Positions 7,529 to 57,201 are shown, counted from the stretch's first letter. The stretch is 64,000 bases of DNA from Macrostomum lignano (GCA_002269645.1 NIVC01000347.1:62001-126000), one strand, 5' to 3'. Translations and numbers: made by a program. Notes: generated by a model not told the origin, from the sequence alone.

Positions 7529-7913
7529 CAGGTGACACGACCAGGTGGCACGTCCAGGTGACACGACCAGGTGGCACGTCCAGGTGACACGACCAGGTGG
7601 CACGTCCAGGTGACACGACCAGGTGGCACGTCCAGGTGACACGACCAGGTGGCACGTCCAGGTGACACGACCAGGTGGCACGTCCAGGTGACACGACCAG
7701 GTGGCACGTCCAGGTGACACGACCAGGTGGCACGTCCAGGTGACACGACCAGGTGGCACGTCCAGGTGACACGACCAGGTGGCACGTCCAGGTGACACGA
7801 CCAGGTGGCACGTCCAGGTGACACGACCAGGTGGCACGTCCAGGTGACACGACCAGGTGGCACGTCCAGGTGACACGACCAGGTGGCACGTCCAGGTGAC
7901 ATGTCCAGGTGTC
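7529..7913 (+). repeat. 26-bp minisatellite (13+13 dimer) caggtgacacgac-caggtggcacgtc, about 15 near-perfect units
   Basis: Read directly; explains the three overlapping repeat ORFs at 7493-7902. Confidence 0.97.
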
Positions 7914-8925: not shown

Positions 8926-11900
8926 ATGCGATTGCTGCCATCTGGAGAAGGTGTAAAGCGATTTGTTTTACTCCTAATTCTTTGTCACTTGAAAATAGTT
9001 CGTTGCACGAGTAAGTGAACAGCGGTTCTGTTTTCTTTTTTACTTACTTTAAAATTATAGCAAAATAATAGTACATCAAAGCACATGACCGGTTTTGAAC
9101 ACATTTCAGGGCCTTGTACTAATCAAGTTCGCTTGGAAAAATTTTCCGGAATCATAGATCACCCGGGTGCCGGCAAAAATTACTCAGCTGACTCAGATGT
9201 TTGCTGGCTAATCGAAATTGAAGGATCAGTTGCTATACGATTTACTAAATTTGATCTAGAAAACAACTATGACTGGATAAAAATCTATGAGGATACTACT
9301 CTTCCTGAGAGTGAAAGTAAAGTAAGGTTTCACCTTAGCAATGTGGAACAGGTAGCTAATTCTGAGTTTTGGCTGACTGGCAGGGTAGTACTAATTCGGT
9401 TCAAAAGCGACACCAGTGTTCAGAAGACTGGATTTCGTCTTATGTATCGAAAAATTCCTTTTTACACACTGCCTGTTGCAGGTAAGTTTCCAATGGCAAT
9501 ACATGGTCAATATGGACTGCATAAAACTGCATATGTAGGTGATGGTGCATTCGCTAACTCTCATAATGTGAATTTTACTTGAGTAGTTGTTCGCTGCAAA
9601 TTTCACTAATTATATAAAAAAATTTAAGTTACAGTTACTTAAATTTAAGATACTTACATGGAGACTAGCCAATTGTACATTGCAAATAGCTCAGATATTC
9701 GTTTCGGTCTAAGTTTCGTTTAAATTGATTTTTTACGTTCTTCTATCCGCTTTACTAAGCCCTTTAATTTGCCAAAAAGGTGGACCATCAGCCGTTGAGA
9801 TCATATCTGGTGCATCGGCTGGCGTAGTTCACAGCCACGCCGGGTTCGAAAAAGGCAAGAACTATTCGCACAATGTCCAGCAGGCTTGGAGCATCAGAGC
9901 GCAGCCAAGCCAGCTAATTCGAGTCACATCCCTAGATGAAATCGTCATGCCATTTCTTAGCAGATCTGTCTGGAGCTTCTCGCTACGTTCTTGCAAGAAC
10001 GTAACAGATCTGCACTATTAAAATATATAGGCAGAACTTACAAGATCTGCAGGAAGATCTTGCACGGTCTGCACGAGCAGATCTTAGGAGATCTGGGCAG
10101 ATCTTGTAAGATGTATTAAGCTTTACCAATTGAATGCATTGTCCGTCTTATCAAATCTTCCAAGATCTGTTTAGTAATCCATTTATAAAACCCCAATGCA
10201 CTAATTTAATTCCAATAAAGAACACGAGTTATGACAGGACTTTCTTATTTGATTCTGCACTTTTAGTATTGTGCTAGTAAGCTGCCAGAACAAAAGCAAA
10301 TGTCATTGAACAATTAAAATAAAGTAGACATATTTATTTGTGAAAATGTAATTGTAAACAAATACACATATATGCTCATGAAATAAAACTTGTATGCACA
10401 AGGGAAATGGCACAAGCAAAAAATAAGTCAACTTCAAAACAAAAGTTAAGCACACATTCAATAGAAAAAATACTAATGGTACAATGGACTAATAAAATTA
10501 GGGTGAGCAATACTTTTAGAAACTAAAAAATAGAAGCAGAAACATTTGAAAAAAAAACCAGGTGCATCTTTTACTACAATGTACAATTAAATTGGTTTGC
10601 AAATAATTGAAACTGAAAGAGTCCAGTACTGAAAGATTTTAAAGTCAATATTGCTAGAAAGCTTACTTTGTTATCAATAAAAGTAGGTCTATAAGAGCTC
10701 TTAGTAATACTTTAGGGCTCTTTATCATGTTGCATTTTTACTTTAGGCTGGATTCATTTTTTCTTTTAGCAAACATAGGATGCTTGCCACTTTGCCATTT
10801 GGTATAAAGACAAGCTTGGAACCCATAAGTAGCGATGCCATATTGACCATGTAAAGTAGCAGCAATGAAAGGGAAAATTGTAGTAAAGTTCTGGGATTTT
10901 AAACATTAATATTCAATTCAAAATAACTAAAACATAAAACAAATATCATTGTTATGTTTTTAAATAGTCAGAGTAATAACTTTTGTAAAAGTTCTTTGGT
11001 CTAATTAAATTTAGACCTGTTTTTCTTCTATTCTATATTTTTCATATTATTTATCTAGGCTTATCTAGTATCAATAATTTTAGATTTTGCTATGCCTATC
11101 TATATTCTTCAAATAGTAGGTCAAGGCTTAAGATAACTTTCTAACAACCACAAGCCTATATTTAAGCATCCAGGTTTAATTCTAATTCAGAAAAACTATA
11201 CCCTATATAGCAATTACAATTTTTAGTAGAGTAGGGCCTATTTTATTTTAAAATTAAAATGATAAGCCTAGTTATAACACTATTTACTAAAAATAGGCAT
11301 TACATTCTTAACCTAAGTGTTTAAAATCAAGGAGGGATTAAAACCAAGTTTTACAGATATGTCAGTCTACCTATTTATAAATCTAGATAAGCATATATAA
11401 AACAAACAAAAACAGAATAGACCTATTTAATTAAGATTTACTTACTAGCTAGGTCACTAGAACTAGCCTAGCCCTAGCCTAGGGGCTAGAACTAGGTATG
11501 TATATATAAATATAATATAATGAAATGCAAAAGACTACAAAAATACTGATCTATGGGCCTTTTCATATTGCTTGTTCTGGTTCCAGAACCAGAACCAATT
11601 TGTGAAGTATAACTTTTTGTCTCCAAAGCTAGAAGGAGATACCTGCTATAAAGTTTTTATTATTGAATGACAATCGCCAAGAAGAAAGTGAAAAATCGTG
11701 CAAAGTGAGGCTGTTACGGCAGTCAAATATTAACAGAGTTTAATAGTTATACTGCTGTTTTTCTTGGAATTCCGAACCGATTCTGGTTCTGGAATTGGTA
11801 ATATGAAAAGGCCCTATGTATGTAACTGAATTTCTGAATTATTAATGGATTAATGAATTATTAATGGACAACATCACTAGGTCTAGACATGCATTCTGTT

Positions 11901-14900
11901 TCTATTAAAGCATAGAACAAAGTCATAGGCCTAGGCCTACTCATACTTATAGGCCTGGGAGTAGGAAACAAGCCTAGATATATATATGATATAGATATAT
12001 ATATAGCATATCATACATTTTATAGTCAGTCTGTCAATTATGTCAAATTTTTCTAATTGATGACGCGATCTGCTCTTCATTTAAAGCCATAGCTATACTT
12101 AATCAAAAAAAGTTATTATGGCTAAAAAAGTAAAAAATAGTGATACTACACTATGAAACAATTTAAGGAATTAAAAATTACGTATTCGGCTAAGTCAAAA
12201 GAAAGAACTGAGATGATCCATGGATATTGCAAGAGCGAGAATTCAAACTATAAGGGTCCACTATGTTCAGAACTGCGGAAAAAATATTTAAACAAATTCA
12301 TTTACTGTTGGCTGCCAGAAGAACAAGTAAAATAAATACAAATCATTAAAAAAACGTAATTACTATTATTTTAAATATTTTGTGGAAAAAAACAATTCAG
12401 ACACTTTTCAAAACTGGTCTGTACAGATCTGCAAGAACTGATCTGACAAGATCCAGCAGAGAAATGTCAAAATATACGAAAGTCTTTTTTCTGATATACA
12501 GTTAGAAATTTTGTTTTCTCTTTACCTCATAAGTATTTTCTAAAAAATCACGAATGTTTTTTACGTATTAAACAATAAAAAATGGCTTGCAAAGATTTGT
12601 AAGATCTTGTAAGACAAAAGCAGATACAGATCTGCTAAGAGATTTAAGTAAGAACAGATCTGTTAAGAATGTGTTAACCAAAGTTCACAGATCTGTTAAG
12701 AAATTTAAGTAAGAACAGATCTGCCAAGAATGAGTAAACAGAACTTCATCTAGGGATTCACCACGTTCAACACGGAAAAGAACTTTGACTTTCTGCGAAT
12801 ATTTTCCGGTGCCTTGCCAAACGTTCAAAGCAATGAAATGTATGCCAACCTGTCCGGCAACATAGCGAAACTGACGGATTATAATTTCTTCGGCAGTCTG
12901 ACTTTTGTATTTAGCTCGGACAGATCCAACGATGGGAAAGGCTTCAGATTTATTTATCAAATTTTGCGGACAGGTATGATAAACATGCAATCATATGTTT
13001 GTGATCGAATGTGTGGTTTTCTTTCTTTGAAGTTGAATTTTTAAAAGGAGTTGGACCTTTTTGGCTTGATTGAAATTTGGGAGTGTGATTTATAATAGCG
13101 AACTTAAAAGCGTATAATAGCAGTGAGCATTGCAACTTTACCCGTTGAATACCAATGAAATATTTAGAGCATATAATAGAGAATCAGGAGTTACGGACAA
13201 CTGAAGTAGAAGTACGCTACAATCGATTTTCTTAGGCCGGTAAAGGGACGTTTGTTTGTCGTATCTGTAGAGAACTCGAGTGCTGTCAAACTTGATCAGC
13301 AAAGCAGCAATGTTCGCTCATATTTCAGACTATAATCTTCAACCTGTTTTTCACAATTGGACCGGCAGTTTCTCCAAGGAACTCGACAGAACAGCCGATT
13401 TTAGTCTGATTGCCAAACCGGCGGACAGTGCTTTGAAAGCTCGCTGCAGCGTGCGGAAAGAGTGTGCAAACCACTCTGAGACGTTTGTGACGGTAATGCT
13501 ATACAATTATCTTGGTATACATGTACTAACCCTTCGCCTTCCACTGATCATCGATCATCTCCACCACACTAAGACAAACGCATTAGCGATTGGATTGTGA
13601 ATTAGCGAGAGGTATACAAATATTTAGACATAGCGATTTCGTCTTAGAATATGATTGTTATTATATTTGTTATACTACAGAACCTCAGACTTATCCCGTA
13701 CGCTTAAGACTTGCTTTCATTTACGCTAGTACATATAATCATGTTAGGGTGCTGTAGCCTAGTAAGCTAGAGCGTCAGACTCGCAACTGAAAGGTCGGGG
13801 GTTCGACTCTCGACCCACTCGGAACAATTTTTGTCCTTAAGCAAGATCCACACTTAACTTCAGTTCACCCAGCTGTAAAATGGGTACCAGCATTAGCTGG
13901 GTTAATTAAGGGTGTGTGTGGCGACCCACACAATGAGCATTATTGCCAATTTAATGTAATTTTTCATCTATTTTATTCTAGCGTGCGCCGTTCCCATGCT
14001 CGCCTGAGTCACCTGAAGTAACGTAGCATTGAATGTAGTTGAATCCCCACCCCACATAAAAAAGACCTAAAGACTCTTGAAAGTGGAAGCAGACTTTCAT
14101 GGCAATTTGCACTTTCCCTTTACAATTTACTGTCATGAAACACTTGTGGTTGCAGCTTTTTATAAGAGTGCAGCTGTTCACAACTGCAACACTCCACCCA
14201 CCTCTGATAAAACTGCAATGCATTAACCTAACCTATTCAATAATCTAAATCCAATTCTTAATGGTCATTGCAATAGTCTCTAAAATTATATTAGGTTAAA
14301 TATCATCCTTATACTCGTACTTAAATAGCCTAACTATGATGAAGTTTCTTTGCAAATCAGAGTGATTGCTGAAAAACTGACAATTTTTCAGCTTTTACGA
14401 GCTGTGTGATCTTAAAATCAACAGTACCTCTACTCCCAACTTTCGAATCACAAGTGAAACAATAATCTCTTCTAGCAGTGGTTTACTAAGAAGTTTAAAA
14501 TGAATTTTAAAGCGAAGTAAACTGCAAGGTTAAAACGCATGCAAACTTAACTTTCAACTACTTCTAATGATTTAGAATGTTTATGCTAAACGGGTTACAG
14601 GCCACTTTTTCTTGAAGGAAAAATCGTACTATGAAAATTCCAATCTTTGTAAAAACCGTTTAAAGACTGCAAATGAATTCTACGTGCTGTTCTTGCAAAA
14701 ATAATATTGTCTTTTTTTACTAATAAAAACACTTTTATTGACATTTAAAAGCCATCAGAGTATCGATATCTTGCTAACGAGATGAGGCTCAAGTTTCAAC
14801 TTCGACCAAGAAAAAGTGACCCAGATTCGTTGTACTGTGTCGGCGCGGTTCTGTGCCACGTCTCGTGGAAATCCGAGGCCTATCGAAATATCGAATACTC

Positions 14901-15783
14901 ACTGGACTTGCCGAAGCGTAAGATAGAATCAATTTGATTCTTTTTAACCAGTTGTAAACAATATTGAAATATTTGTCGCATGATTTCAGCGGATCCAACT
15001 TCATTGAGCATCCATCTCGTCAGACCAGATCTCTGGACACAGACAGGCTTAATCGAGTTTTTCGCTGTGTCCGAGTCTGTTTGTCCGAAAGTGAGACACC
15101 GCTGCGAGCTGAGAACAGAAGACGGAAGGATAGTGGAAGCCAGGATCCTTCAAGTGGTTTGTGACCCAAATTCTTTTATGAAGTGCTTATGTAGTAGAGA
15201 TTTTCAAAACAATATTGAGCAAATAAAATCGATTTCGCCATATAACTTTCAGACCGCGTCTCCCACTAAGCCGGCAAGTTGTCATATCAGTTCATTAAAA
15301 ACCCTGTTTGCGACGCCGATTCCTGGCAATGGCAGTTTTGATGCAACAACAATAGCTTGTCGATTGAATGACGGCAATTTTATCAAGTATCGAGTGACAT
15401 CGAAAACTTTCACTGGTGAGCAGATTAAAAAAGTAATAATTTCTTTTATACTCGCTCGTAAAACTGCTTTCCAAACTTATACATGAAGCAAGAAAATCAT
15501 TTTTACAGCTCACCAAGAGTCACAGAAATCAATGAATGCATGGGAACGGCCGTTACATATAATAGCCTGGGTGGCTGCTGCAGTGGCTGTTACACTGCTT
15601 GTCGCTGTTATGATTCGAAACGCCAGGAACCGAAAAAAGCGTCACGGTCTTACCGCCGTCAACAGAGCCGCCCTGAAGATGAGCAAACAGGAGGTCGGGC
15701 ACGGGCATAGTAGTAGTGCTTCTTTCAGAAACAACTCTTACTTAACAAATCATCCTGCTAATGAAGTAAGTTATGCTCGCTAA
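8926..15783 (+). CDS. Type I membrane protein: signal peptide, 2 CUB domains, Cys-containing region, TM, short tail (about 648 aa without the insertion); exon 3 is interrupted by a DNA transposon
   Basis: Phase-consistent exons 8926-9010, 9110-9481, 9780-9929 + 12758-12973, 13168-13211 + 13271-13492 (alternative single exon 13329-13492), 14761-14917, 14990-15415, 15509-15783. CUB motifs: NYSADSDVCWLI...FTKFDLENNYDWIKI...FKSDTSVQKTGF and NYSHNVQQAWSI...FNTEKNFDFLRI...FSSDRSNDGKGF. TM: IIAWVAAAVAVTLLVAVMI followed by RNARNRKKR. Confidence 0.8.
9930..12755. mobile_element. Non-autonomous DNA transposon (2826 bp), probably CMC/EnSpm-like: CCC...GGG ends, 2-bp TSD
   Basis: 11-bp perfect TIR ccctagatgaa / ttcatctaggg; AT duplicated at 9928-9929 and 12756-12757; dense AGATCT subterminal motifs at about 9960-10150 and 12420-12725; AT-rich interior with no recognisable transposase. 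Confidence 0.88.
11555..11814. mobile_element. 260-bp MITE (Harbinger/Tourist- or Zator-like) nested in the larger element
   Basis: 15-bp perfect TIR gggccttttcatatt / aatatgaaaaggccc; TAT on both sides (11552-11554, 11815-11817); subterminal ttctggtt / aaccagaa motifs. Confidence 0.88.
13747..13960 (+). mobile_element. tRNA-derived SINE with a CORE/Meta-like central domain (intronic)
   Basis: A-box-like tagcctagtaagctagagc, B box ggttcgactc (13800-13809), then gtccttaagcaag...cagttcacccagctgtaaaatggg; homologous copy at 49928. Confidence 0.88.
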
Positions 15784-18700
15784 TTTAGATATTGTTATAT
15801 GAGACTTAAGTAATTAAGACAGATTACGTATCTTTAGGTATATGTACTACTTTACAGTTGATATTTTTATTTCTGGCTTCTGTCTAAGTTAGACGCTTAA
15901 GAGAAACGTTTAGAGAAACACACTAAATGATCCATATCGAATGTGTTGATAGAACCATGCAGGCTTAACCAAAGTATCCGCTAAGGATCGAGAAACTGTA
16001 GCTATTGAGATTAGTTTTAACCAATGAAAAAGCTAAACCACACTTCCTCCAGGAAAACAAGTCATCAATAGGCACCATTCGGTCTATATTATCGAATTAA
16101 AATCAAGATGACGCAATCAACATTTCAGAATCAAGTGAATGAAGTTTACGTCACGTTACCTAACTAAAGGTACAATTTAGATCTAAATTCATCAACAATC
16201 GAAGTGACAATTGTGACGGTCGCAAACGAAATATGCTACATTAAGTTTATTTTTAAACAATTACTTTTTGTTGGTTTTTTATTTTACGAGTACTGTTGTT
16301 AAATCATAAGAAAATTTGTGTGTACATATACTGGCAAACTATTTGTTTGGCACGATTAATTTACTATTGAACTTGCAGCTTTTTGCTGTCAGTTTGAGCT
16401 TAGAAGAAGTTTGAATGGTGAGCAGACAATCTTTGGGATATTGACTTATAGTCCATTTTCTCCTTTTGTATCTTTGTCTCTTAATTCTTATTATCGTAAA
16501 GCACTGCAAGCAATCGACACAACTGTCTTGGCGTGAATCTTCGTCCATTTCGCGATATCGACCAGTCGCTCACCTCCGTCCGATGCTTCAATGACGACGA
16601 GACTGCATCTCATCACTGATCTTCGTCCATGTTCTTGGTTGCGGCCCGACACCCTGCTCGTCTGCCGGGGTATGCAGTTTCATATAGCTAAACGTTGCTG
16701 TCTTTATCTTCCCAGCTCATATTGTTGCTGATTTGTAAGCCTTTTTGGCAGACATGAGAGAACTATGTCAATGCTCCGAAGATTATCTTTGCTCACCAAT
16801 CAAACATTTGGGTCATTGACTGGGGGCAGCAGTTTTCTTGAGTGTAGCTCTCTGCCCATGGATGAAGGAATACCTGCCACTCTAAAATTAAGTCTACTGC
16901 TCCTAAACTCTCAAACTGACTGCAGAAAGCTATATTTATAAGTAGATGTATAATATAAAATTATATACATACTACTATACATGTTCGCGTGTACATTTAT
17001 GTATTTCAAGCAGTATTATAAACATTTTTGGTTGCTTTTGGTTGTAAAATGCTATTTGAATTGCTTATTCAACACCCTATTATTGTCGTGTTGATCGTTC
17101 AACCTGTACTATATATTTTCGCCTTTTCTGCAATAGAAATTTTTACTTGAACACTTAATGAACGACAGTATTATTAATGATGGAACTATATATTTATCTA
17201 AGCTAGAGCTAGTGATTTGAAAACACTGCATGGTTTCCATGATATTGTTGAAAACAAGAACAAAACTACATGTATAAAGTCAGGTCGATACACTCTAATA
17301 CATACATGTATTTAAAAATCCTGGCCTAGAAGGTTCTTACATTCTGTAATAGTACATGTACTTCATCTTCGATATCAATTAGGGACCACCAGCGCCAGGG
17401 GCGTCGCCATTAATTTTATGGTGAGGGGGACAAAGCCAAAAATTGTACGTGTGTATGTACTGACTAAATTCCTACATCATGTACACTATTTTGAGAATCG
17501 GTTTTGTCAAAAAATCACGATTCTTTCGCCGCAGGCACCATTTTAGCGCTGCAGGCACTCTCATTTTAGCGCCGCAGGCACTCATTTTAGCGCCGCAGGT
17601 ATACTCATTTTAGCGCTGCAGGTACTCATTTTAGCACCGCAAGCACCATTTCACTTTCTTTTCTTAATTTGATAGTAGAGAATCAAGTAGTCAAGTAGGT
17701 AGTCATGTGGATAAATTTAAACCAATCATTATCCCCGAATTGGACCCAAAATCTTTCTCTATGCAGTTTTTCTTGCGCGCACACTGATACACCAAACGTA
17801 CAGTACATGTTAAGTCGCATTTCGCAGACGAAGTGGCCAATATAGCAATGTGATAATGGTTTAATTTGATTCTGTATATGAGCTACAGTTGTACAAATTC
17901 TTGCAGAATTTGGGGGTTTCGACAAAAAAGCCTCTTATGGCAGCGTTTCCATGGAAACCTATATGTCGGACTAAAATTACTACAGTGTGTGTACGTTATG
18001 TACAATATTTTTGGGAATCGCAGGGCATGCTATAATTGTAGTACGATCATTTTGGCGCCGCAGGGTACGCATTTAGCGCCGAACGCCAAGGGCCCAATTA
18101 TTAGGGCCCCCTATAGCTAGAAAGCAAAATTATTGATTTCCATGACGGGTCACAATTAAGGTGGGGCGAGGGGACAATAAAGCATTGGCATGTCCAGCCA
18201 TATTGCTTTTACTATATAGTGATATATCCCCCGACCCGCCTCCCAGCTTAATTGTCCCTGATCTCCTGTGGCTATACGCCGCTGATGTGTTACGACAAAA
18301 AATCCGATACATCATCGAGGCCTTTGTAGATTTCAGTGCAAATACACGATTCAAGCAAATCTTAAAAAATGTGTCGATTCGGAGCGCCCGTGATATGTCA
18401 GTTATATTATACGTTATGCAGGGGCATACATGCTTGTACATATGTAAGCTAATTAAAAATGTATTAACATTAAAATTAACTGAGAAGAAGACAAGCGGAT
18501 TAATTTTAGCAGAGCAGGCGTCTCTTTTCGACTTATTAGAGTTAAGCAGGAAAAATGCTAAGCATTTTTTAAAGGTAAAGAACTTATTTTCTCAAAAAGG
18601 TTTTAAAAATTTCAAAAATTCCCTGCACACTTATATTAAAGCAGGGTTTGGCAAACCGTTGTGTTTCTGAACCATAGTTCTCGACACTTTTTTATCAAAA

Positions 18701-21058
18701 AATTTACATCACGGATACGGATAGACTCACAAATTTGTAAAATTATGGACAAATAAGCGTATTCAAAAAGCATTTTTGTTAAAAAGAACACTCGTTTATT
18801 TGAATCGTCTGTCTGTGTTTTAACTTCAATCTGTCGTGGAAATTTGTATCGTTAGTAGTCCTCTACATTTCATGATGCTGAGGGCCGGAAAAGCACTAGC
18901 TGGAAGCTTACATCTACAACAGACCAGAGCTTTTGCGAGAGGTTGGTGGCAATGTTTTATGATTATAGGCCCTGGCCTGGCCCGGCTTCAGCAATAAAAT
19001 AGGCCTATGCCTAATATTAGGCCTACTTTAACTTTAAGTTTAAGCATTCTATTATATTAATCAAAGTAGGCCTACTAATTAATTGCCAATAAAATAAATG
19101 AATATGAAAGAAAACATTTTCATAAAGTTAGGCTTATTTTTAAATAGCAATTTTCATTTTTTAATTTTAATTTAGGCCTTCAACTCAAGTGTAGGCCTCA
19201 AGTGTGTGTGGATGATATTGATACTGATGCCTGATAGAGATAGGCCTAGTATGGCTTCCAGAAAATCCAGTGACAAGATGATTCTGCAACAGACAATCTG
19301 GCAACAGTCAAATCAGTGAGGGTGACAGACAATCTGGTGACAGAGATTTTATATTGCAAAATTTACACAGATTTTAAACACAAATTTAGATACAAACAAA
19401 ACTTTATATGAACTATAGTTTTTAATTTTAGGCCCACATGTAGAGAATTCACTTTAGGATAAGCAGTATATTTTTTAAAAAGATTATATATTATATCTAT
19501 ATTTTTGATAGTTAAGGATGATATCACATCAAAAATGTTTTAATGTAATAATGTATCTCCAGATAATAAAACTAGTGTGCAGCCTTTAGCAAAAATATAA
19601 AAGAACATATTGATTTAATTCAGTTTCCCATTTTTAAAGCAGTACATACATGCATCATATTATCATTATAAGAATATAAGCTGTTGATTGCCAGAATTGG
19701 GACCCTTAGCATATACATATAGGCCAACTAGTCTAGTCATTTACTAATTTTACTATTTGACATCAACAGTTGACAATTTATCCATTGGAACTCATTAATA
19801 TTCCTATTGAATCTTTGAAATCTTTGAAAAGGCCTATTTCTATTCTATTTCCAATTTTTAATAGTTAAGCTAGATATTGCAAAGTTCAATGCTAGCCTTG
19901 CTAGGCCTTACCCTTATTTCTGCAAGAGATATACTTGTAGTTAGTGCTAGTGGTCTTCTAGCAATAGTATTGTTAGAATGCATAATGCACATTGCATAGT
20001 AAAATAATTTAATGCAAAAAACCAATAGATTGCCACAATTTTTATTTAGGTAAATATTTTGCTTGTATGCTATTCAGCATTGTAGCAATTTTTATAATAT
20101 TTTTCTATTTTTGTTATAATGTCCCAGGTTATATCATAATCAAGTATGATTTTTTAAAGCTATCATTGGCATATAAAAAAGCATATCTATTAGGCTAGCC
20201 TATATACCACACTAGTTTAGAGCTCATTGTCAGTTTTTTGTTTGTAGAAAGTACTTTATTCTATTTTACATTTATTTTAAAACCCTTTAAGATCAGAATA
20301 ACAGATCATTTTGTAAATTTAAATTATACCAACAAAGATTAGAATCCTTGAGAGCTTTCAAGAGGATTCAAGAGGATCCTTGAAAGGATTAATCTTTAAA
20401 ATCTTAGAGCCTAATTCATTGGAATCCCAAGATTGGGAAAATCTAACATATCCCAATCTTGAAAATCCAAGGATTTTGTCTGTGATATCCCAAATCAAAA
20501 AATTCCTGGATTAGCAAAACTTGAAATTTTGTATTCCCTAGAAGGTCATATATTTAAGTTTTTAATATTATGTTTATTTAAACAAACAATATCAAACACT
20601 ATTGAATTTTCAAGATTTTTCAATTTGATTTTTTGGCAATATAATACAAGATTAGATTTAGTTTTAAAATTTTTTTTCAAACTATTGGCTAAATCTCTTG
20701 ATATGGGTAACACTAAAATGAGTTAAATTTTTAGACTAATCTGAAAGCAGTTTAAATTCCATGTGTTTATAATATTTAGATATGCTATATTAAGAGTATT
20801 GGTATCCAATCTAGGGCTATTTGTTTTCACTTTATTTTATATATCAGATTTTCACACTTAAAAAAAGATTTGATCAAGAAAAAATCTAAATTCTTAAACA
20901 TTTTTTTTGTTTTTCTTTGTATAATTTAACTAAGGAATAATGACTATATGTGGAAAGTGTAGATATATGGAAGGTTATAAAAATTAGAAACATTGTCTTA
21001 TTTAAAACTCCTAATTTTTTTTACTAAAATATATTCAAAACTAACAACATTTACATTC

Positions 21059-24000
21059 ATGTCAATGCTGTCTTCAAATCCACTAGAGCAACTGACTCCA
21101 GAGTTAAATTGTCGAATTTTTAGCTACCTATCAGCTAAAGAATGCCGACCATGTTTTGAGGTTTCTCGCAATTGGCACCAATTTCTAACTCAAAAGGCTC
21201 CGTGGGGTAGTCTAACTTTGCCTATAAGTTCTCACAGGGTCTGCAGTTCAGAACATCTAACTAAACTGACTGTTCATTTTAGCCGCATCAGTTCAAGCAA
21301 TCAAGATCAAGTTGAATTTGCATTGTCTAGAGCGCCTAATTTAGAGTCTGTAGTTCTACTCATTAAAAATGCCAGTCGAAGTCAGATTCGCTCAATACAA
21401 CCCATTCTTATGAGACTGAGCAAAGAGAGATGGTGTCCGAGTTTGAGACAACTAATTATACGAGGCGGCCCGTGCAATCTGACTGATGATGGAGTTTTGA
21501 ATTTGACTCAAGGGTGAGGAGACTCTCGATTGAGAAATAAAATGGAGCTGGATAAATTGAGATACTTAAGTAGCGGTCGAGACAATGGGTTAAGAGCCAT
21601 AGAGCCGATTGGTTTAAAATAAAAATGACTAAATTTTAAAAGTAGAGGTAGCGGGTAAAGAGCGGAGGGTGGGACGGGTAAAGATTGGAGCATAGGGCGG
21701 GTAAAAAGCGGAGGGTGGGGCGGGTAAAGAGCGGAGGGTGGGGCGCGTAAAGATTGGAGCATAGGGCGGGTAAAAAGCGGAGGGTGGGGCGGGTAAAGAG
21801 CGGAGGGTGGGGCGCGTAAAGATTGGAGCATAGGGCGGGTAAAAAGCGGAGGGTGGGGCGGGTAAATATTGGAGCATGGGGCGGGTAAAAAGCGGAGGGT
21901 GGGGCGGGTAAATATTGGAGCATGGGGCGGGTAAAGAGCGGAGGGTGGGCGGGTAAATATTGGAGCATGGGGCGGGTAAAAAGCGGAGGGTGGGGCAGGT
22001 AAATATTGGAGCATGGGGCGGGTAAAAAGCGGAGGGTGGGGCAGGTAAAGAGCGGAGGGTGGGGCGGGTAAAGAGCGGAGCATGGGACAAGTAAAGAGCG
22101 GATGATTCGTTGGGTAAAGATCGGAGCATAAGGCGAGTAAAGAGCGGAGGGTGGGGCGGTTAAAGAGCAAAAGTTATATCAGGTAGAGATCGGAGCATAG
22201 GGCGGGTAAAGAGCAGATGGTGGAGTGGGTAAAGAGCGGAAGAGAAGTCGCATAGAGAAGGCATTAGTTGTGTTTTAGAGTCGTAATTTTTTTATATGAA
22301 TCTATTATGGTTGTTCACAGGTGTTCGAAACTCAGCCACTTCGAGTTTCATCCTACAAGCCTGGTAACCAATCATTCTCTAGTTGCCATGGCAACTAATT
22401 GGCCAGAATTGCGCTCACTAACTATGTTAAACTGTTTGGGATTAAATCTTGGTGACGGTTCAGCTGTGGGCATCTTCAAACTGCTAGAACAGTGCCGCGA
22501 GCTGCGTAGGCTGAGACTGGCTATTGGTCACGGAATTAAGCCGACATTCTTTACCAGACTGGGCAAGTGCGCTGCTCAGCTCACTCACCTGCGAATGGAG
22601 CTAATTGAGGTTGGAAGTTTTTTAGTCACGTTGGTGGCTTGTTTCATACTTTTATTGTTTATTCAAAAACCCAAACCAAAATCCTGGAGATCTCAAATCT
22701 CCACGGAAATCCAGATCCTAAATCCCCTAATCCAGACCCCAAATCCTCTAATTCAGATCCCAAATCCTCACTAAAATCCAGATCCCAAATCCCCACTCTA
22801 ATCCAGATCCCAAATTCCCGCTCTAATCCAGATCCCAATTCCTCACTAAAATCCAGATCCCAATTCCTCACTAAAATCCAGATCCCAATTCCTCACTAAA
22901 ATCCAGATCCAAAATTCCAATCTAATCCAGATCCCAAATCCTCTAATCCAGATCCCAAATCCTCTAATCCAGATCCAAAATCCCCACTCTAATCCAGATC
23001 TCAAATCCTCTAATCCAGATCCCAAATTCCCACTCTAATCTAGATCCCAAATTCCCACTCTAATCTAGATCCCAAATTCCCACTCTAATCTAGATCCCAA
23101 ATTCCCACTCTAATCTTGATCCCAAATTCCCACTACAGATCCCAAAATCCCACTCTAATCCAGATCCCAAATCCTCACTGAAACCCAGATCCTACATCCC
23201 CCACTTTACTTGAATCAAGATCTCAAATCCCCACTCTAATCCAAATCTTAAATGCTTTAAAACGCAAATAAAAAATATTCCCATATTTAAATGTACCCTT
23301 TATAGGGAGATCAAGGCTTCGACTCCTGGGGCGAGCTTGACGGATTGGACGGCTTGTCTGGCTGCTCAAACTTGAGTAGCCTGGCCTTGGTCGACTGCGG
23401 GTACCCCGGCCCTAACGCCTTCGCCTCCTTGGCTGCTCACCTGACTGGGCTGCGCCATCTGCTACTCAAGTACGGTCAGACAGAGCCGCCCTCTGCTTCT
23501 GCCTGCATTAACGACCAGCTGCTGCTGGCTGTGGCTGAGCACTGCCCACTGCTGGAGACTCTGCGGCTTGCCGAGTGAGTGCCCGCTAATGCTTTTCTCA
23601 GTTGCTGAGCCAGCCTCCCAGATCCTCAGTTGCTGGGCCAGCTTCCCAGATCCTCAGTCTGCCAGATCCTCAGTTGCTGGGCCAGCCTCCCAGATCCTCA
23701 GTTGCTGAGCCAGCCTCCCAGATCCCCAGTTGCTGGGCCAGCCTCCCAGATCCTCAGTTGCTGGGCCAGCCTCCCAGATCCTCAGTTGCTGGGCCAGCCT
23801 CCCAGATCCTCAGTTGCTGGGCCAGCTTCCAATCCCAGATCCTCAGTCTGCCAGATCCTCAGTTGCTGGGCCAGCCTCCCAGATCCTCAGTTGCTGGGCC
23901 AGCCTCCCAGATCCTCAGTTGCTGGGCCAGCCTCCCAGATCCTCAGTTGCTGGGCCAGCCTCCCAGATCCTCAGTTGCTGGGCCAGCCTCCCAGATCCTC

Positions 24001-24825
24001 AGTTGCTGGGCCAGCTTCCAATCCCAGATCCTCAGTCTGCCAGATCCTCAGTTGCTGGGCCAGCCTCCTAGATCCTCAGTTGCTGGGCCAGCCTCCCAGA
24101 TCCTCAGTTGCTGGGCCAGCCTCCCAGATCCTCAGTTGCTGGGCCAGCCTCCCAGATCCTCAGTTGCTGGGCCAGCCTCCTAGATCCTCAGTTGCTGGGC
24201 CAGCCTCCTAGATCCTCAGTTGCTGGGCCAGCTTCCAATCCCAGATCCTCAGTCTGCCAGATCCTCAGTTGCTGAGCCAGCCTCCCAGATCCCCAGTTGC
24301 TGACAGTCTCACGCACCCTCGCCGCCACTCATTCCCAGCTGCCAGAGCATCACAGACGTGGGCCTCAGCCAGCTGAAGTTGCTCAGCCAGCTCAATCGCC
24401 TCACTATTCGAGGCTGTCACGGTCTCCGAGACCCAGTCAGCATCAACAATGGGCAGAGCCATAGCCCGGATGCAGATTCTGGCATCACCACATCCGGCTT
24501 GGCCTCGGCTGTAATTTCTTGCGCTAAGCTGTCTCGCCTATGCGTGGAATTCTCAATGTCGCACCGGCTGCCGGATGGCGATCAGCTGATCAGCAGGCTG
24601 GAGTCCAAGTGTGGCTCCATCGTAAACCTGAGCCTAATTGGCCTGACCGATATTAGCCATGCCAGTTTGAAATTTGTCGGTTTAAAGTTTGCCAGCTTGA
24701 CCAGGCTGCGGCTCGGCTGTTGCAGTCGCATTGGCGAAACTGCCAGAGCCGACTTTCTGAGGGATGGCAGACCGGCTCTGCTCGAACGGGACATGGTTGA
24801 GCTGCTGGAGTCGACTCAGTGTTGA
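21059..24825 (+). CDS. F-box/leucine-rich-repeat protein (FBXL-like), 499 aa
   Basis: Exons 21059-21513, 22321-22609, 23306-23574 and 24339-24825 are phase-consistent and total 1500 nt. F-box LEQLTPELNCRIFSYLSAKECRPCFEVSRNW; Cys-containing LRRs (CPSLRQLIIRG, CSKLSHF, CRELRRLRL, CPLLETLRL, CQSITDVGL). Confidence 0.92.
21648..22250 (+). repeat. G-rich minisatellite (gcggagggtggggcgggtaaa / attggagcatagggcgggtaaa) filling F-box intron 1
   Basis: Read directly; source of the Pro-rich minus-strand ORFs. Confidence 0.93.
22690..23250 (+). repeat. About 21-bp minisatellite (taatccagatcccaaatcccc variants) in F-box intron 2
   Basis: Read directly. Confidence 0.9.
23595..24300 (+). repeat. 28-bp minisatellite gatcctcagttgctgggccagcctccca in F-box intron 3
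   Basis: Read directly; explains ORFs 23602-24211. Confidence 0.96.
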
Positions 24826-40444: not shown

Positions 40445-41209
40445 ATCTGTCTAATCTCTCTCTCTCTTATCGCTCTCACCTGTCTTATCTCTCTCTCACC
40501 TGTCTTATCTCTCTCTCTCTCACTTGTCTTATCTCTCTCTCACTTGTCTTATCTCTCTCTCACCTGATCTCTCTCTTTCGTCTTCTTATCTCTCTCTCGC
40601 CTGTCTTATCTCTCTCTCACTTGTCTTTCTGTCTCTCCCTGTCTTTCTCTCTCTCACCTGTCTTATCTCTCTCACCTGTCTTATCTCTCTCTCGCCTGTC
40701 TTATCTCTCTCTCACTTGTCTTTCTGTCTCTCCCTGTCTTTCTCTCTCTCACCTGTCTTATCTCTCTCACCTGTCTTATCTCTCTCTCACCTGTCTTATC
40801 TCTCTCTCTCACCTGTCATATCTCTCTCACCTGTCTTATCTCTCTCTCACCTGTCTTATCTCTCTCTCACCTGTCTTATCTCTCTCTCTCTCACCTGTCA
40901 TATCTCTCTCACCTGTCTTATCTCTCTCTCACCTGTCTTATCTCTCTCTCTCACCTGTCATATCTCTCTCACCTGTCATATCTCTCTCACCTGTCTTATC
41001 TCTCTCTCACCTGATCTATCTCTCTTTCGTCTTCTTATCTCTCTCTCGCCTGTCTTATCTCTATCTCACTTGTCTTTCTGTCTCTCCCTGTCTTTCTCTC
41101 TCTCACCTGTCTTATCTCTCTCACCTGTCTTATCTCTCTCTCACCTGTCTTATCTCTCTTACCTGTCTTATCTCTCTCTCTCACCTGTCTTATCTGTCTC
41201 TCACCTGTC

Positions 41210-41243
<34 letters not shown>

Positions 41244-41355
41244 TGTCTTATCTCTCTCTCTCTCACCTGTCTTATCTCTCTCTCACCTGTCTTATCTCTC
41301 TCTCACCTGTCTTATCTCTCGCTCACCTTTCTTATCTCTCTCTCACCTGTCTTAC
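40445..41355 (+). repeat. CT-rich minisatellite (tctctctcacctgtctta)
   Basis: Read directly. Confidence 0.94.
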
Positions 41356-42004
41356 TTCTATGTATAACTTTTTTTCGCCTTTGTCACTTATTTTTTCGAA
41401 CACACTGCTCTCTAGGCCATCTCAAAAGTATCTACTTCAGCTCTGTAATCAGCAGCAATCGACAAAGATTGCACAGCAGTCGCACACCTGCGGGATACCC
41501 TATAATTAGAAGCAAAATCGAGTTCAGAAGACACAGAATGTAAAAGTGTGCCATGTTTTACCAATAGCTATAATAGCCTTATATTGCAGTCCCGCGTCAT
41601 ATAGACATATCATCTAGCCTCCATCCAGTCTCCATCTTTTATTAAAAATCAATCGGGGATCAGGGATAGAGGAAGGCGGAGCCAAAATCCCCGGGATTCT
41701 CAGGAGCGGAATGGATAATTCTCCGTCAAAATAGCCCAGCTTCTAGGGGCAGAGCCGCCATAAAACTGTGCCCCAGCCGCCCCTGAACCGAAGTAAAAAG
41801 GGTCGCTTCCTCCTTCTGTCCAGCATAATAAAGTCGGAGAGGAAGTAAGAGGAGGGGGAACTGCTCAACCCTCTATACTCGCTCCTTTATGCCTGCTCTC
41901 TCCTTCCTCTCCCATGCGTGGCCCATGGATTATTAGGCACTCATAGATGCTTGGATTGGAAAGCAGAAATTGAATGAAATAAACGCCATTTAATTTTTGC
42001 TTGT

Positions 42005-43525
42005 GGCATCTCAGCAACTCTCCCCCATTGAGCCATGGCATGTCAGCAACTCCCCCCCCCATTGAGCCATGGCATCTCAGCAACTCCCCATTGAGCCATG
42101 GCATGTCAGCAACTCCCCATTGAGCCAATTGGCATCTCAGCAACTCCCCCATTGAGCCAATTGGCATCTCAGCAACTCCCCCATTGAGCCATGGCATGTC
42201 AGCAACTCCCCATTGAGCCAATTGGCATCTCAGCAACTCCCCCATTGAGCCATGGCATGTCAGCAACTCCCCATTGAGCCATGGCATGTCAGCAACTCCC
42301 CATTGAGCCAATTGGCATCTCAGCAACTCCCCCATTGAGCCATGGCATGTCAGCAACTCCCCCATTGAGCCATGGCATGTCAGCAACTCCCCCATTGAGC
42401 CATGGCATGTCAGCAACTCCCCCATTGAGCCATGGCATCTCAGCAACTCCCCATTGAGCCATGGCATGTCAGCAACTCCCCATTGAGCCAATTGGCATCT
42501 CAGCAACTCCCCCATTGAGCCAAGGCATGTCAGCAACTCCCCATTGAGCCAATTGGCATCTCAGCAACTCCCCATTGAGCCAATTGGCATCTCAGCAACT
42601 CCCCCATTGAGCCAATTGGCATCTCAGCAACTCCCCCATTGAGCCATGGCATGTCAGCAACTCCCCATTGAGCCAATTGGCATCTCAGCAACTCCCCCAT
42701 TGAGCCAATTGGCATCTCAGCAACTCCCCATTGAGCCAATTGGCATCTCAGCAACTCCCCCATTGAGCCATGGCATCTCAGCAACTCCCCCATTGAGCCA
42801 ATTGGCATCTCAGCAACTCCCCCATTGAGCCAATTGGCATCTCAGCAACTCCCCCATTGAGCCAATTGGCATCTCAGCAACTCCCCCATTGAGCCAATTG
42901 GCATCTCAGCAACTCTCCCCCATTGAGCCAATTGGCATCTCAGCAACTCCCCCATTGAGCCAATTGGCATCTCAGCAACTCCCCCATTGAGCCAATTGGC
43001 ATCTCAGCAACTCCCCCCCCCATTGAGCCAATTGGCATCTCAGCAACTCCCCCATTGAGCCATGGCATCTCAGCAACTCCCCCATTGAGCCAATTGGCAT
43101 CTCAGCAACTCCCCCCCATTGAGCCAATTGGCATCTCAGCAACTCCCCCATTGAGCCATGGCATCTCAGCAACTCCCCCCCCATTGAGCCAATTGGCATC
43201 TCAGCAACTCCCCCCCATTGAGCCAATTGGCATCTCAGCAACTCCCCATTGAGCCATGGCATCTCAGCAACTCCCCCCCCATTGAGCCAATTGGCATCTC
43301 AGCAACTCCCCCATTGAGCCATGGCATCTCAGCAACTCCCCCATTGAGCCATGGCATCTCAGCAACTCCCCCATTGAGCCATGGCATCTCAGCAACTCCC
43401 ATTGAGCCATGGCATCTCAGCAACTCTCCCCATTGAGCCATGGCATCTCAGCAACTCCCCCATTGAGCCATGGCGTCTCAGCAACTCCCTCATTGAGCCA
43501 TGGCGTCTCAGTAACTCCCCAATTG
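42005..43525 (+). repeat. About 30-33-bp minisatellite gcatctcagcaactcccccattgagcc(aatt/at)g
   Basis: Read directly; many units carry the palindrome CCAATTGG. Confidence 0.96.

Positions 43526-46392: not shown

Positions 46393-57201
<10,809 letters not shown>

What the first reader, a model, noticed from the sequence alone, without database searches (positions are those of the whole stretch)
9920..12770. 2.8-kb DNA transposon inside a CUB coding exon whose right TIR offers an in-frame splice acceptor (possible transposon-to-intron conversion)
Seen: the element runs 9930-12755 with an 11-bp TIR and AT TSD. Removing it with one TSD copy restores LIRVTFTTFNTEKNFDFLRI, a canonical CUB segment, and I saw no stops or frameshifts in the other modelled exons. 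The right TIR contains cttcatctAG|gga (AG at 12752-53), which is phase 0 with the downstream frame. Two phase-0 donors exist: GT at 9923 (CGA|GTCACA) would give LIR-GFTTFN, replacing VT with G; GTAACA at 10001, inside the element and reached through a frame open to 10021, would give a 26-aa in-frame insert. Established: CACTA/EnSpm (dSpm) insertions can be spliced from exons, and introner elements create introns this way. Inference: the allele may still make near-full-length protein. Caveat: GTCACA is a weak donor compared with the gene's other donors, so a simple null allele is equally possible.
Basis: partly seen in the sequence, partly recalled or inferred. Interest (0 to 1): 0.75.

Follow-up and report, generated by a model that had tools for sequence, protein, structure and literature searches.

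The report
Transposon disrupting a flatworm CUB gene
A 2.8-kb non-coding DNA transposon sits inside a coding exon of one of at least three near-identical copies of a Macrostomum lignano CUB-domain membrane-protein gene. Available evidence indicates it simply breaks that copy rather than acting as a new intron, which is an ordinary event in a repeat-rich, partly duplicated genome.

Summary
The window is Macrostomum lignano contig NIVC01000347.1:62001-126000. A 2,826-bp element (9930-12755) has perfect 11-bp terminal inverted repeats, a 2-bp AT target-site duplication, AGATCT-core subterminal repeats and no ORF. It interrupts exon 3 (second CUB domain) of a 9-exon gene encoding a signal peptide, two CUB domains and a transmembrane helix. 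Two paralogous loci carry the exact empty site, and one of them encodes the intact 592-aa protein.

The second adds 25 aa, not 26.

The "transposon-to-intron" reading is not supported:
- Both candidate donors score below all eight real donors of the gene, and GT9923 scores below the median of all GT dinucleotides in the window.
- The acceptor is a weak TAG that is also an in-frame stop codon.
- The element supplies no donor.
- The transcript-based GenBank annotation splits the locus into a 232-aa ORF that reads into the element and a separate 363-aa 3' ORF.
- No database protein carries any predicted junction.

The 2-bp AT duplication and CCC...GGG termini fit ISL2EU-type elements better than CACTA. 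The most likely status is a disrupted redundant gene copy.

The parts
9930..12755 (+). Non-autonomous TIR DNA transposon, 2,826 bp, about 31% GC, no ORF longer than 63 aa
   Evidence: Absent from paralogous loci L001 and L003 at exactly these boundaries. ORF list, six-frame segments, composition.
9928..9929 (.). Left copy of the 2-bp target-site duplication (AT)
   Evidence: The empty sites carry a single AT.
12756..12757 (.). Right copy of the 2-bp target-site duplication (AT)
9930..9940 (+). Left terminal inverted repeat CCCTAGATGAA
12745..12755 (-). Right terminal inverted repeat (TTCATCTAGGG on the + strand). It contains the candidate acceptor AG at 12752-53, which is also part of the in-frame TAG at 12751-53.
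9952..10170 (+). Left subterminal repeat region: 8 AGATCT cores, with the TTCTTAGCAGATCTG motif at 9954
12423..12744 (-). Right subterminal repeat region: 6 AGATCT cores, four TTCTTRRCAGATCTG motifs in inverted orientation, and a 28/61-nt tandem at 12626-12747
11555..11814 (.). Nested 260-bp inverted-repeat (MITE-like) segment inside the element, with 34-nt arms GGGCCTTTTCATATT... flanked by TAT on both sides
   Evidence: (I1). Structural inference only, because no other copy was found.
9780..9929 (+). Exon 3, 5' part (first half of CUB2), ending in ...LIRVT
12758..12973 (+). Exon 3, 3' part (second half of CUB2, FTTFNTEK...). The whole exon is 366 nt and phase 1-1, so skipping it stays in frame.
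10019..10021 (+). First in-frame stop (TAA) after read-through into the element. It ends the annotated 232-aa product PAA85100.1.
9923..9924 (+). Candidate cryptic donor CGA|GTCACA (in frame with AG12753), score -6.0 bits
10001..10002 (+). Candidate cryptic donor AAC|GTAACA inside the element (in frame with AG12753, +25 aa), score -2.3 bits
12838..12840 (+). ATG where the separately annotated 3' ORF (PAA85101.1, 363 aa, MYANLSG...) begins
8926..16167 (+). Host gene: signal peptide, CUB, CUB, transmembrane helix and tail. Exons are 8926-9010, 9110-9481, 9780-9929/12758-12973, 13329-13492, 14752-14917, 14990-15156, 15253-15415, 15509-15765 and 16129-16167.
   Evidence: The paralog P0004 is 592 aa.

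Best explanation
A non-autonomous cut-and-paste DNA transposon of 2,826 bp inserted into exon 3 (the second CUB domain) of one copy of a multi-copy Macrostomum lignano gene. The element has 11-bp TIRs and putative transposase-binding subterminal repeats with an AGATCT core. Its 2-bp AT duplication is the signature reported for ISL2EU-type (PHIS) elements. The host gene encodes a type-I membrane protein with two CUB domains.

The insertion happened after the gene copies diverged, because two paralogous loci keep the empty site. It breaks the reading frame of this copy. Transcripts from the gene's promoter run into the element, meet a stop 92 nt inside it and probably end at one of the 17 AATAAA/ATTAAA signals on the sense strand. 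The result is a 232-aa secreted fragment (signal peptide, CUB1, half of CUB2) or no stable product. The 3' half is at best expressed as a separate, N-terminally truncated RNA. Function is covered by the intact paralog.

Shown: the insertion, its boundaries, the empty sites, the intact remainder of the gene, the split annotation, and the poor quality of the candidate splice sites. Inferred: transcript termination inside the element, loss of function, and the superfamily assignment.
For: Boundaries and empty sites. TIR and subterminal repeats. No coding capacity.

The gene is otherwise intact (592 aa) and exon 3 is 366 nt.

Annotation: the window equals NIVC01000347.1, and the locus carries two GenBank gene models. 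PAA85100.1 is 232 aa, identical to the predicted unspliced read-through product, and PAA85101.1 is 363 aa. That annotation is RNA-seq and transcript based (PMC5730564). Two ParaSite models, P0008 and P0009, also read into the element. The intact paralog PAA75150.1 lies on NIVC01000900.1.

Splice sites: candidate donors score below all real donors, the acceptor is a weak TAG, and neither fits the species motifs.

Other support: 7 AATAAA and 10 ATTAAA on the + strand of the element. ISL2EU elements generate a 2-bp duplication, typically AT (PMC4122938). No protein in the 15-billion collection carries a splice-across or exon-skip junction.
Against: - No RNA-seq reads could be examined directly.
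- The annotation used multimapping reads (up to 1000 loci) among about 99%-identical paralogs, so the models at this locus may partly reflect transcripts of the paralogs or of other element copies.
- The rest of the gene shows no stop or frameshift. This is compatible with a recent insertion but also with continued use.
- The ParaSite model P0007 starts exactly at the coden following the TIR AG (GFTTFN...), which could mean that this AG is used as an acceptor.
- The superfamily call rests on duplication length and sequence alone. No second copy and no transposase were found.
Confidence: 0.72

Rival explanations
1. Transposon-to-intron conversion. The element is removed from the pre-mRNA by cis-splicing from a cryptic donor (GT9923 or GT10001) to the AG in the right TIR. 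This gives a 591- or 617-aa near-full-length protein.
For: Both combinations are in frame and free of stops. All other exons are intact. P0007 begins exactly after the TIR AG. There are established precedents for splicing of exon-inserted transposons: maize dSpm/Ds and C. elegans Tc1 (own knowledge), and introners (PMC9860276).
Against: - The donors score -6.0 and -2.3 bits against -1.4 to 8.6 for the real donors. GT9923 is worse than the median random GT.
- Neither donor fits GT[G/A]AG, and the acceptor is TAG with low pyrimidine content.
- The element and its AT duplication supply no donor.
- The transcript-based annotation gives two separate ORFs, one reading into the element.
- No database protein has either junction.
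- The products damage a core beta-strand of CUB2. The Pfam score drops from 32.2 to 22.2 bits for the 591-aa form.
Confidence: 0.07
2. Exon skipping. The 3.2-kb interrupted exon 3 is skipped as a whole (9481^13329). Exon 3 is 366 nt and phase 1-1, so this gives an in-frame 470-aa protein that lacks only the CUB2 domain.
For: Exon arithmetic and translation. The flanking donor (CAG|GTAAGT, 8.6 bits) and acceptor (TTTCAG|A) are strong. Enlarging an internal exon commonly causes skipping (own knowledge).
Against: No protein with the junction PVA-D-YNLQ or YSLQ exists in the collection. The annotation shows exon 3a joined to exon 2 in the 232-aa model. No reads were examined.
Confidence: 0.12
3. 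Gene fission by the transposon. The element supplies poly(A) signals for the 5' half. An unpaired acceptor (the TIR AG at 12753, or another one nearby) is SL trans-spliced. One gene then becomes two independently processed mRNAs, Mlig011261.g1 and Mlig004241.g1.
For: GenBank has two gene models with different transcript-cluster names at this locus, and the pipeline cuts units at trans-splice and poly(A) evidence. [quoted passage not shown] P0007 starts at 12754. The sense strand of the element carries 17 poly(A) hexamers.
Against: - ATCTAG|G does not fit the trans-splice motif [T/C]TNCAG.
- The start of P0007 also coincides with the first codon after an in-frame stop.
- PAA85101.1 would lack a signal peptide, so a functional product is doubtful.
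- No SL or T-fill reads were examined.
Confidence: 0.1

Closest known systems
ISL2EU superfamily (PHIS: PIF/Harbinger-ISL2EU-Spy) non-autonomous elements
   Same: 2-bp target-site duplication with the sequence AT, which is stated to be typical of ISL2EU (PMC4122938). Short TIRs and a cut-and-paste architecture.
   Different: No transposase (THAP-DDE) or YqaJ gene is present. No autonomous partner or second copy was found, so membership rests on the duplication alone. The TIR sequence could not be compared with Repbase.
   Same: Numerous short subterminal repeats in direct and inverted orientation. Mirage-type members make 2-bp duplications. In maize bz-m13, dSpm is spliced using an acceptor in its terminus (own knowledge).
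   Different: The termini are CCCTAG...CTAGGG, not CACTA or CA..TG (PMC12730594). The duplication is AT of 2 bp, not 3 bp. There is no evidence of splicing here.
Introner elements (PMC9860276)
   Same: A TIR/TSD DNA element in a coding exon whose terminus contains an AG that could serve as a 3' splice site. Some introner families change the protein by a few codons.
   Different: - Introner families have median lengths of 30-654 nt and 5 to more than 2,000 intronic copies. This is one 2,826-bp copy.
- The AT duplication cannot create a GT/GY donor.
- The annotated transcripts read into the element rather than removing it.
- Flatworms are not mentioned in that paper's main text.
Tc1 insertions in C. 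elegans exons removed by cryptic splicing (own knowledge: Rushforth and Anderson 1996)
   Same: A 2-bp-duplication DNA transposon in an exon of an invertebrate that also uses SL trans-splicing. Partial function could be restored by imprecise splicing near the element ends.
   Different: There, splicing was shown by cDNA. Here no junction evidence exists, the candidate sites are weaker than random expectation for one of the two donors, and the duplication is AT, not TA.

Membership tests
Class II TIR (cut-and-paste) DNA transposon | Terminal inverted repeats at the exact ends of the inserted segment | tested here: met
   11/11 perfect CCCTAGATGAA at 9930-9940 and 12745-12755. These are the only two copies in 64 kb.
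Class II TIR (cut-and-paste) DNA transposon | Target-site duplication, verified against an empty site | tested here: met
   AT is duplicated in the window and single in L001 and L003.
Class II TIR (cut-and-paste) DNA transposon | Multiple copies in the genome, or an autonomous partner with a transposase | not testable with these tools
   There is no other copy in the window, L001 or L003, about 130 kb in all. The M. lignano genome cannot be searched by DNA here. The six-frame protein query found nothing.
ISL2EU (PHIS) | 2-bp duplication, typically AT | tested here: met
   Criterion from PMC4122938.
ISL2EU (PHIS) | THAP-DDE transposase plus a YqaJ exonuclease gene (or TIR identity to such an autonomous element) | not testable with these tools
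   The element has no ORF longer than 63 aa, and no autonomous copy is available.
CACTA/EnSpm (CMC) | 5'-CACTA (CA..TG) termini | tested here: not met
   The termini are CCCTAG...CTAGGG. Criterion from PMC12730594.
CACTA/EnSpm (CMC) | 3-bp duplication (2 bp in Mirage-type) | tested here: inconclusive
   2 bp is compatible only with the Mirage or Plavaka-like branches.
Tc1/mariner (ITm) | TA target-site duplication | tested here: not met
   The duplication is AT, and no register of the ends gives TA. Criterion from PMC10045372.
piggyBac | TTAA duplication with 5'-CC..GG-3' termini | tested here: not met
   The termini fit (CCC...GGG), but the target is CAC-AT-TCA with a 2-bp duplication, not TTAA.
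Introner (transposon-generated intron) | The element is removed as an intron from the mature mRNA | tested here: not met
   Tested only indirectly. The transcript-based GenBank models read into the element and split the gene. No protein with a splice-across junction exists. RNA reads were not available.
Introner (transposon-generated intron) | Both splice sites are supplied by the element and/or its duplication | tested here: not met
   An AG is present in the right TIR. There is no GT/GY in the left TIR or in the AT duplication. The nearest GTs score -6.0 to -7.3 bits.
Introner (transposon-generated intron) | A family of many similar copies located as introns in other genes | not testable with these tools
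   The genome is not searchable by DNA here.
CUB domain (host exon) | Pfam PF00431 match above the gathering threshold after restoration of the empty site | tested here: met
   32.2 bits for restored CUB2 and 38.4 bits for CUB1. 64.9 bits for the paralog P0004.

The most novel reading that the evidence does not exclude
In an animal with spliced-leader trans-splicing, the transposon has split one gene into two processed mRNAs. Its sense-strand poly(A) signals end a 5' transcript that encodes a secreted fragment of signal peptide, CUB1 and half of CUB2. The unpaired AG in its right TIR (12752-53) serves as an SL trans-splice (or cis) acceptor for a 3' transcript. That would be transposon-driven gene fission, or the first step of intron creation. 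Because CTAG is part of the TIR, every insertion of this family in either orientation would bring the same acceptor.
Probability: 0.1. Interest if true: 0.55.

Novelty: new member of a known kind. Interest (0 to 1): 0.2.

Why it matters
As it stands this is a routine case. A non-autonomous DNA transposon has knocked out one redundant copy of a gene in a partly duplicated, repeat-rich genome.

It is useful in three small ways:
- It explains why GenBank carries two odd "hypothetical protein" models at this locus, PAA85100.1 and PAA85101.1. They are the two halves of one CUB gene.
- It documents a probably recently mobile element family with a 2-bp AT duplication in M. lignano, where DNA transposons make up about 3% of the genome.
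- It offers a clean natural test locus, with empty-site paralogs in the same genome, for how a trans-splicing flatworm processes a transposon-interrupted exon.

Only if reads showed use of the TIR AG would it bear on intron origin.

Tried and rejected
1. Alternative register (13-nt TIR ATCCCTAGATGAA with a 4-bp TCAC duplication). Rejected because both empty sites retain ...CACATTCAC..., and the corresponding restored protein scores only 21.9 bits for CUB.

2. Helitron reading (insertion between A and T, 5' TC). Rejected because the element has perfect TIRs and the 3' end is GGGA rather than CTRR with a hairpin.

3. Ancient intron instead of insertion. Rejected because no canonical or AT-AC splice pair can yield LIRVTFTTFN, and the paralogs have contiguous exon sequence.

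4. Search for other copies or read-through proteins. A composite query of all six-frame open segments of the element gave no hit at E<=0.01. Only cluster representatives are scored, so sensitivity was low.

5. Pattern scan CCCTAGATGAA-N(10-35)-CAGATCTG. It found 44 metagenome and 2 viral stretches. None shares more than chance similarity with the element (best 28-36 nt at E>=0.001), so these are chance matches.

6. The four gene identifiers (Mlig011261, Mlig004241, Mlig034133, Mlig025522) appear in no paper text and in no supplement of the two M. lignano papers checked.

7. Rfam and tRNA scans of the element found nothing.

8. Lineage-specific substitutions as a test of relaxed constraint. The window lineage has 8 non-synonymous and 2 synonymous changes, against 6 and 5 in the two paralogs. 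The numbers are too few. Seven of the ten changes lie in one locally divergent block, so this is not evidence of decay.


Full report
**What is in the sequence**

The region reads ...CTAATTCGAGTCAC-AT-[CCCTAGATGAA ... TTCATCTAGGG]-AT-TCACCACGTTC.... The 11-mer CCCTAGATGAA occurs exactly twice in the 64-kb window, at 9930-9940 (+) and 12745-12755 (-).

Both ends carry a dense set of short repeats with an AGATCT core:
- 14 of the window's 27 AGATCT sites lie in the element: 8 in the first 300 bp and 6 in the last 350 bp.
- The longer motif TTCTTARCAGATCTG occurs six times in the window. All six are in the element ends, on the + strand at the left and the - strand at the right (0.54 expected by chance).

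The interior is about 31% GC. It has no ORF above 63 aa on either strand, no Rfam or tRNA match, and a nested 260-bp inverted-repeat segment at 11555-11814. This is the anatomy of a non-autonomous cut-and-paste DNA transposon.

**Organism, locus and host gene**

A search with the restored CUB region found Macrostomum lignano proteins. The cluster members and their contigs show that the window is NIVC01000347.1:62001-126000 of assembly GCA_002269645.1. L002 is identical to the window over the overlap.

The host gene has nine exons, all with canonical GT-AG introns: 8926-9010, 9110-9481, 9780-9929/12758-12973, 13329-13492, 14752-14917, 14990-15156, 15253-15415, 15509-15765 and 16129-16167. With the element and one AT removed it encodes 592 aa: a signal peptide, two CUB domains, a cysteine-containing stalk, a transmembrane helix and a tail.

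**Empty sites**

Two paralogous loci of the same assembly align to the window up to 9929 and resume at 12756 with a 2-bp overlap. They are L001 (NIVC01004028.1) and L003 (NIVC01000900.1). Both read GTCACAT|TCACC. So the element is 9930-12755 (2,826 bp) and the target-site duplication is AT.

L003 encodes the intact 592-aa protein PAA75150.1, with LIRVTFTTFNTEK uninterrupted. An alternative register (13-nt TIR with a 4-bp TCAC duplication) is excluded by these empty sites and by the CUB score of the alternative restoration (21.9 versus 32.2 bits).

Away from one divergent block, the three loci differ by only about 0-1.5%. That fits the duplicated chromosome content described for the DV1 line (PMC5730564). 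The insertion is therefore younger than the divergence of the gene copies.

Two ParaSite models read into the element and differ from each other at residue 140 (P0008 has K, P0009 has M). P0007 carries the window-type 3' half with T instead of M at residue 340. The insertion is thus present in the older ML2 assembly as well, possibly in two haplotypes. It is not an assembly artefact.

The arithmetic is right:
- GT9923 to AG12753 gives 591 aa (LIR-G-FTTFN).
- GT10001 to AG12753 gives 617 aa, an insertion of 25 residues rather than 26.

The site quality does not support the proposal. Scores come from a generic metazoan 5' splice-site matrix whose frequencies I entered from memory, so they are rough.

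| Site | Sequence | Score or property |
|---|---|---|
| Eight real donors | GTAAGT x3, GTATGA, GTAATG, GTAAGA, GTTTGT, GTGAGC | -1.4 to +8.6 bits |
| GT9923 | GTCACA | -6.0 bits, 38th percentile of all GT in the window |
| GT10001 | GTAACA | -2.3 bits, 71st percentile |
| AG12753 acceptor | TAG | 41% pyrimidines upstream, versus 47-65% for the real acceptors |

The species-wide motifs are GT[G/A]AG for donors and CAG for acceptors (PMC8629364), and the candidates match neither. The acceptor AG is also part of the in-frame stop codon at 12751-53. The left end of the element has no usable GT, and an AT duplication cannot create one. The element therefore brings at most one weak splice site.

The 591-aa product removes a residue from the conserved I-x-V-x-F-x-x-F strand of CUB2. 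Its Pfam score falls from 32.2 to 22.2 bits.

**Transcript-level evidence available without reads**

The GenBank annotation of this assembly is built from StringTie/TACO assemblies of RNA-seq. These were cut at experimentally mapped trans-splice and poly(A) sites, with ORFs called by TransDecoder (PMC5730564). At this locus it has two genes:
- BOX15_Mlig011261g1 (PAA85100.1, 232 aa). Its sequence and length equal the unspliced read-through product ending at the TAA at 10019-21.
- BOX15_Mlig004241g1 (PAA85101.1, 363 aa). It starts at the ATG at 12838.

No joined model exists. All relatives of the query in the 15-billion-protein collection fall into two clusters, whose nine members were all read. 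None has a LIRGFTTFN, SCKNGFTTFN or exon-2/exon-4 junction. The element carries 7 AATAAA and 10 ATTAAA hexamers on the sense strand.

Two caveats apply. First, reads were multimapped among near-identical paralogs, so the models are indirect evidence. Second, the ParaSite model P0007 begins exactly at 12754 (GFTTFN...). That could reflect use of the TIR AG as a cis or SL trans-splice acceptor, or it could merely be the first codon after the in-frame TAG.

Exon 3 is 366 nt and phase 1-1, and it lies between a strong donor and a strong acceptor. Skipping the whole interrupted exon is in frame and gives a 470-aa protein without CUB2. No evidence for this isoform was found either.

**Classification**

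- CMC-type elements usually end in CA..TG and make 2-5-bp duplications (PMC12730594).
- Tc1/mariner makes TA (PMC10045372).
- piggyBac shares the CC..GG termini but requires TTAA.
- ISL2EU elements generate 2-bp duplications, "typically AT" (PMC4122938).

On duplication length and sequence the element is best placed with ISL2EU/PHIS. This stays provisional because no transposase and no second copy could be examined.

**Is this copy decaying?**

Relative to the two paralogs, the window lineage has 8 non-synonymous and 2 synonymous changes and no stop or frameshift. Seven of the ten changes lie in a roughly 650-bp block (12886-13540) that is 4-14% divergent, against 1.5% or less elsewhere. That pattern looks like a divergent haplotype or a conversion tract rather than decay. 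The numbers are too small to decide.

**Verdict**

The element is a non-autonomous TIR transposon, ISL2EU-like by its duplication, that inserted after the gene copies diverged into the CUB2 exon of one of at least three gene copies.

The best-supported consequence is disruption of this copy, with the intact paralog providing function. Conversion into an intron is arithmetically possible, but neither site quality nor annotation supports it. Direct junction counts from existing RNA-seq would settle the matter. Interest is low and the case is ordinary: a new member of a known kind.

Noticed in passing
L001:9124-9494 (exon 2 of the paralog on NIVC01004028.1); corresponds to window 9110-9481: This empty-site paralog has a 1-nt deletion in exon 2 (CTTGGAAAAA becomes CTT-GAAAAA) that shifts the frame. 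That explains why its GenBank model PAA48879.1 also starts at MYANLSG although no transposon is present. It is either a second pseudogene or a PacBio indel error.
   Followed up: partly
L003:11507-11946 and L001:10431-10885, versus window 13269-13289 (intron 3): Both empty-site paralogs carry an extra segment of about 440 bp that is absent from the window. It is bounded by inverted arrays of a TTCGTCAACCGG-like motif, so it looks like another MITE-type insertion polymorphism between the gene copies.
   Followed up: partly
window 12886-13540: This block is 4-14% divergent from both paralogs, against 0-1.5% upstream and downstream. The two paralogs differ from each other by only 3 of 510 positions here. 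It contains 7 of the 10 window-specific coding changes. It may be a conversion tract or an older haplotype next to the insertion.
   Followed up: partly
window 11555-11814: A 260-bp segment inside the transposon has 34-nt inverted arms (GGGCCTTTTCATATT...) flanked by TAT on both sides. It looks like a nested Tourist/Harbinger-style MITE. No other copy was seen in about 130 kb.
   Followed up: partly
ParaSite proteins P0007, P0008 and P0009 (ML2 assembly), corresponding to window 9094-10018 and 12754 onward: Two models read into the element and differ at residue 140 (K versus M). A 3' model starts exactly at the codon after the TIR AG and has T instead of M at residue 340. This suggests a second transposon-bearing haplotype or copy, and possibly an exon boundary at 12754.
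   Followed up: partly
window 7529-7911; 21651-24302; 25049-27280; 28170-30826; 40465-43525; 54933-56118 and others: The window is packed with minisatellite arrays, for example an 18-nt unit x140 at 28170-30826 with strong GC skew and a 26-nt unit x14.7 at 7529-7911. This is consistent with the high tandem-repeat content reported for M. lignano.
   Followed up: no
window 20993-24822 (+ strand); L003:22927 onward: The downstream neighbour appears to be an F-box/LRR-type gene. Its counterpart in L003 has a faint LRR_FBXL15 hit. Tandem repeats (25-28-nt units) sit between its exons, and synteny with the CUB gene is kept in the paralogous locus.
   Followed up: no
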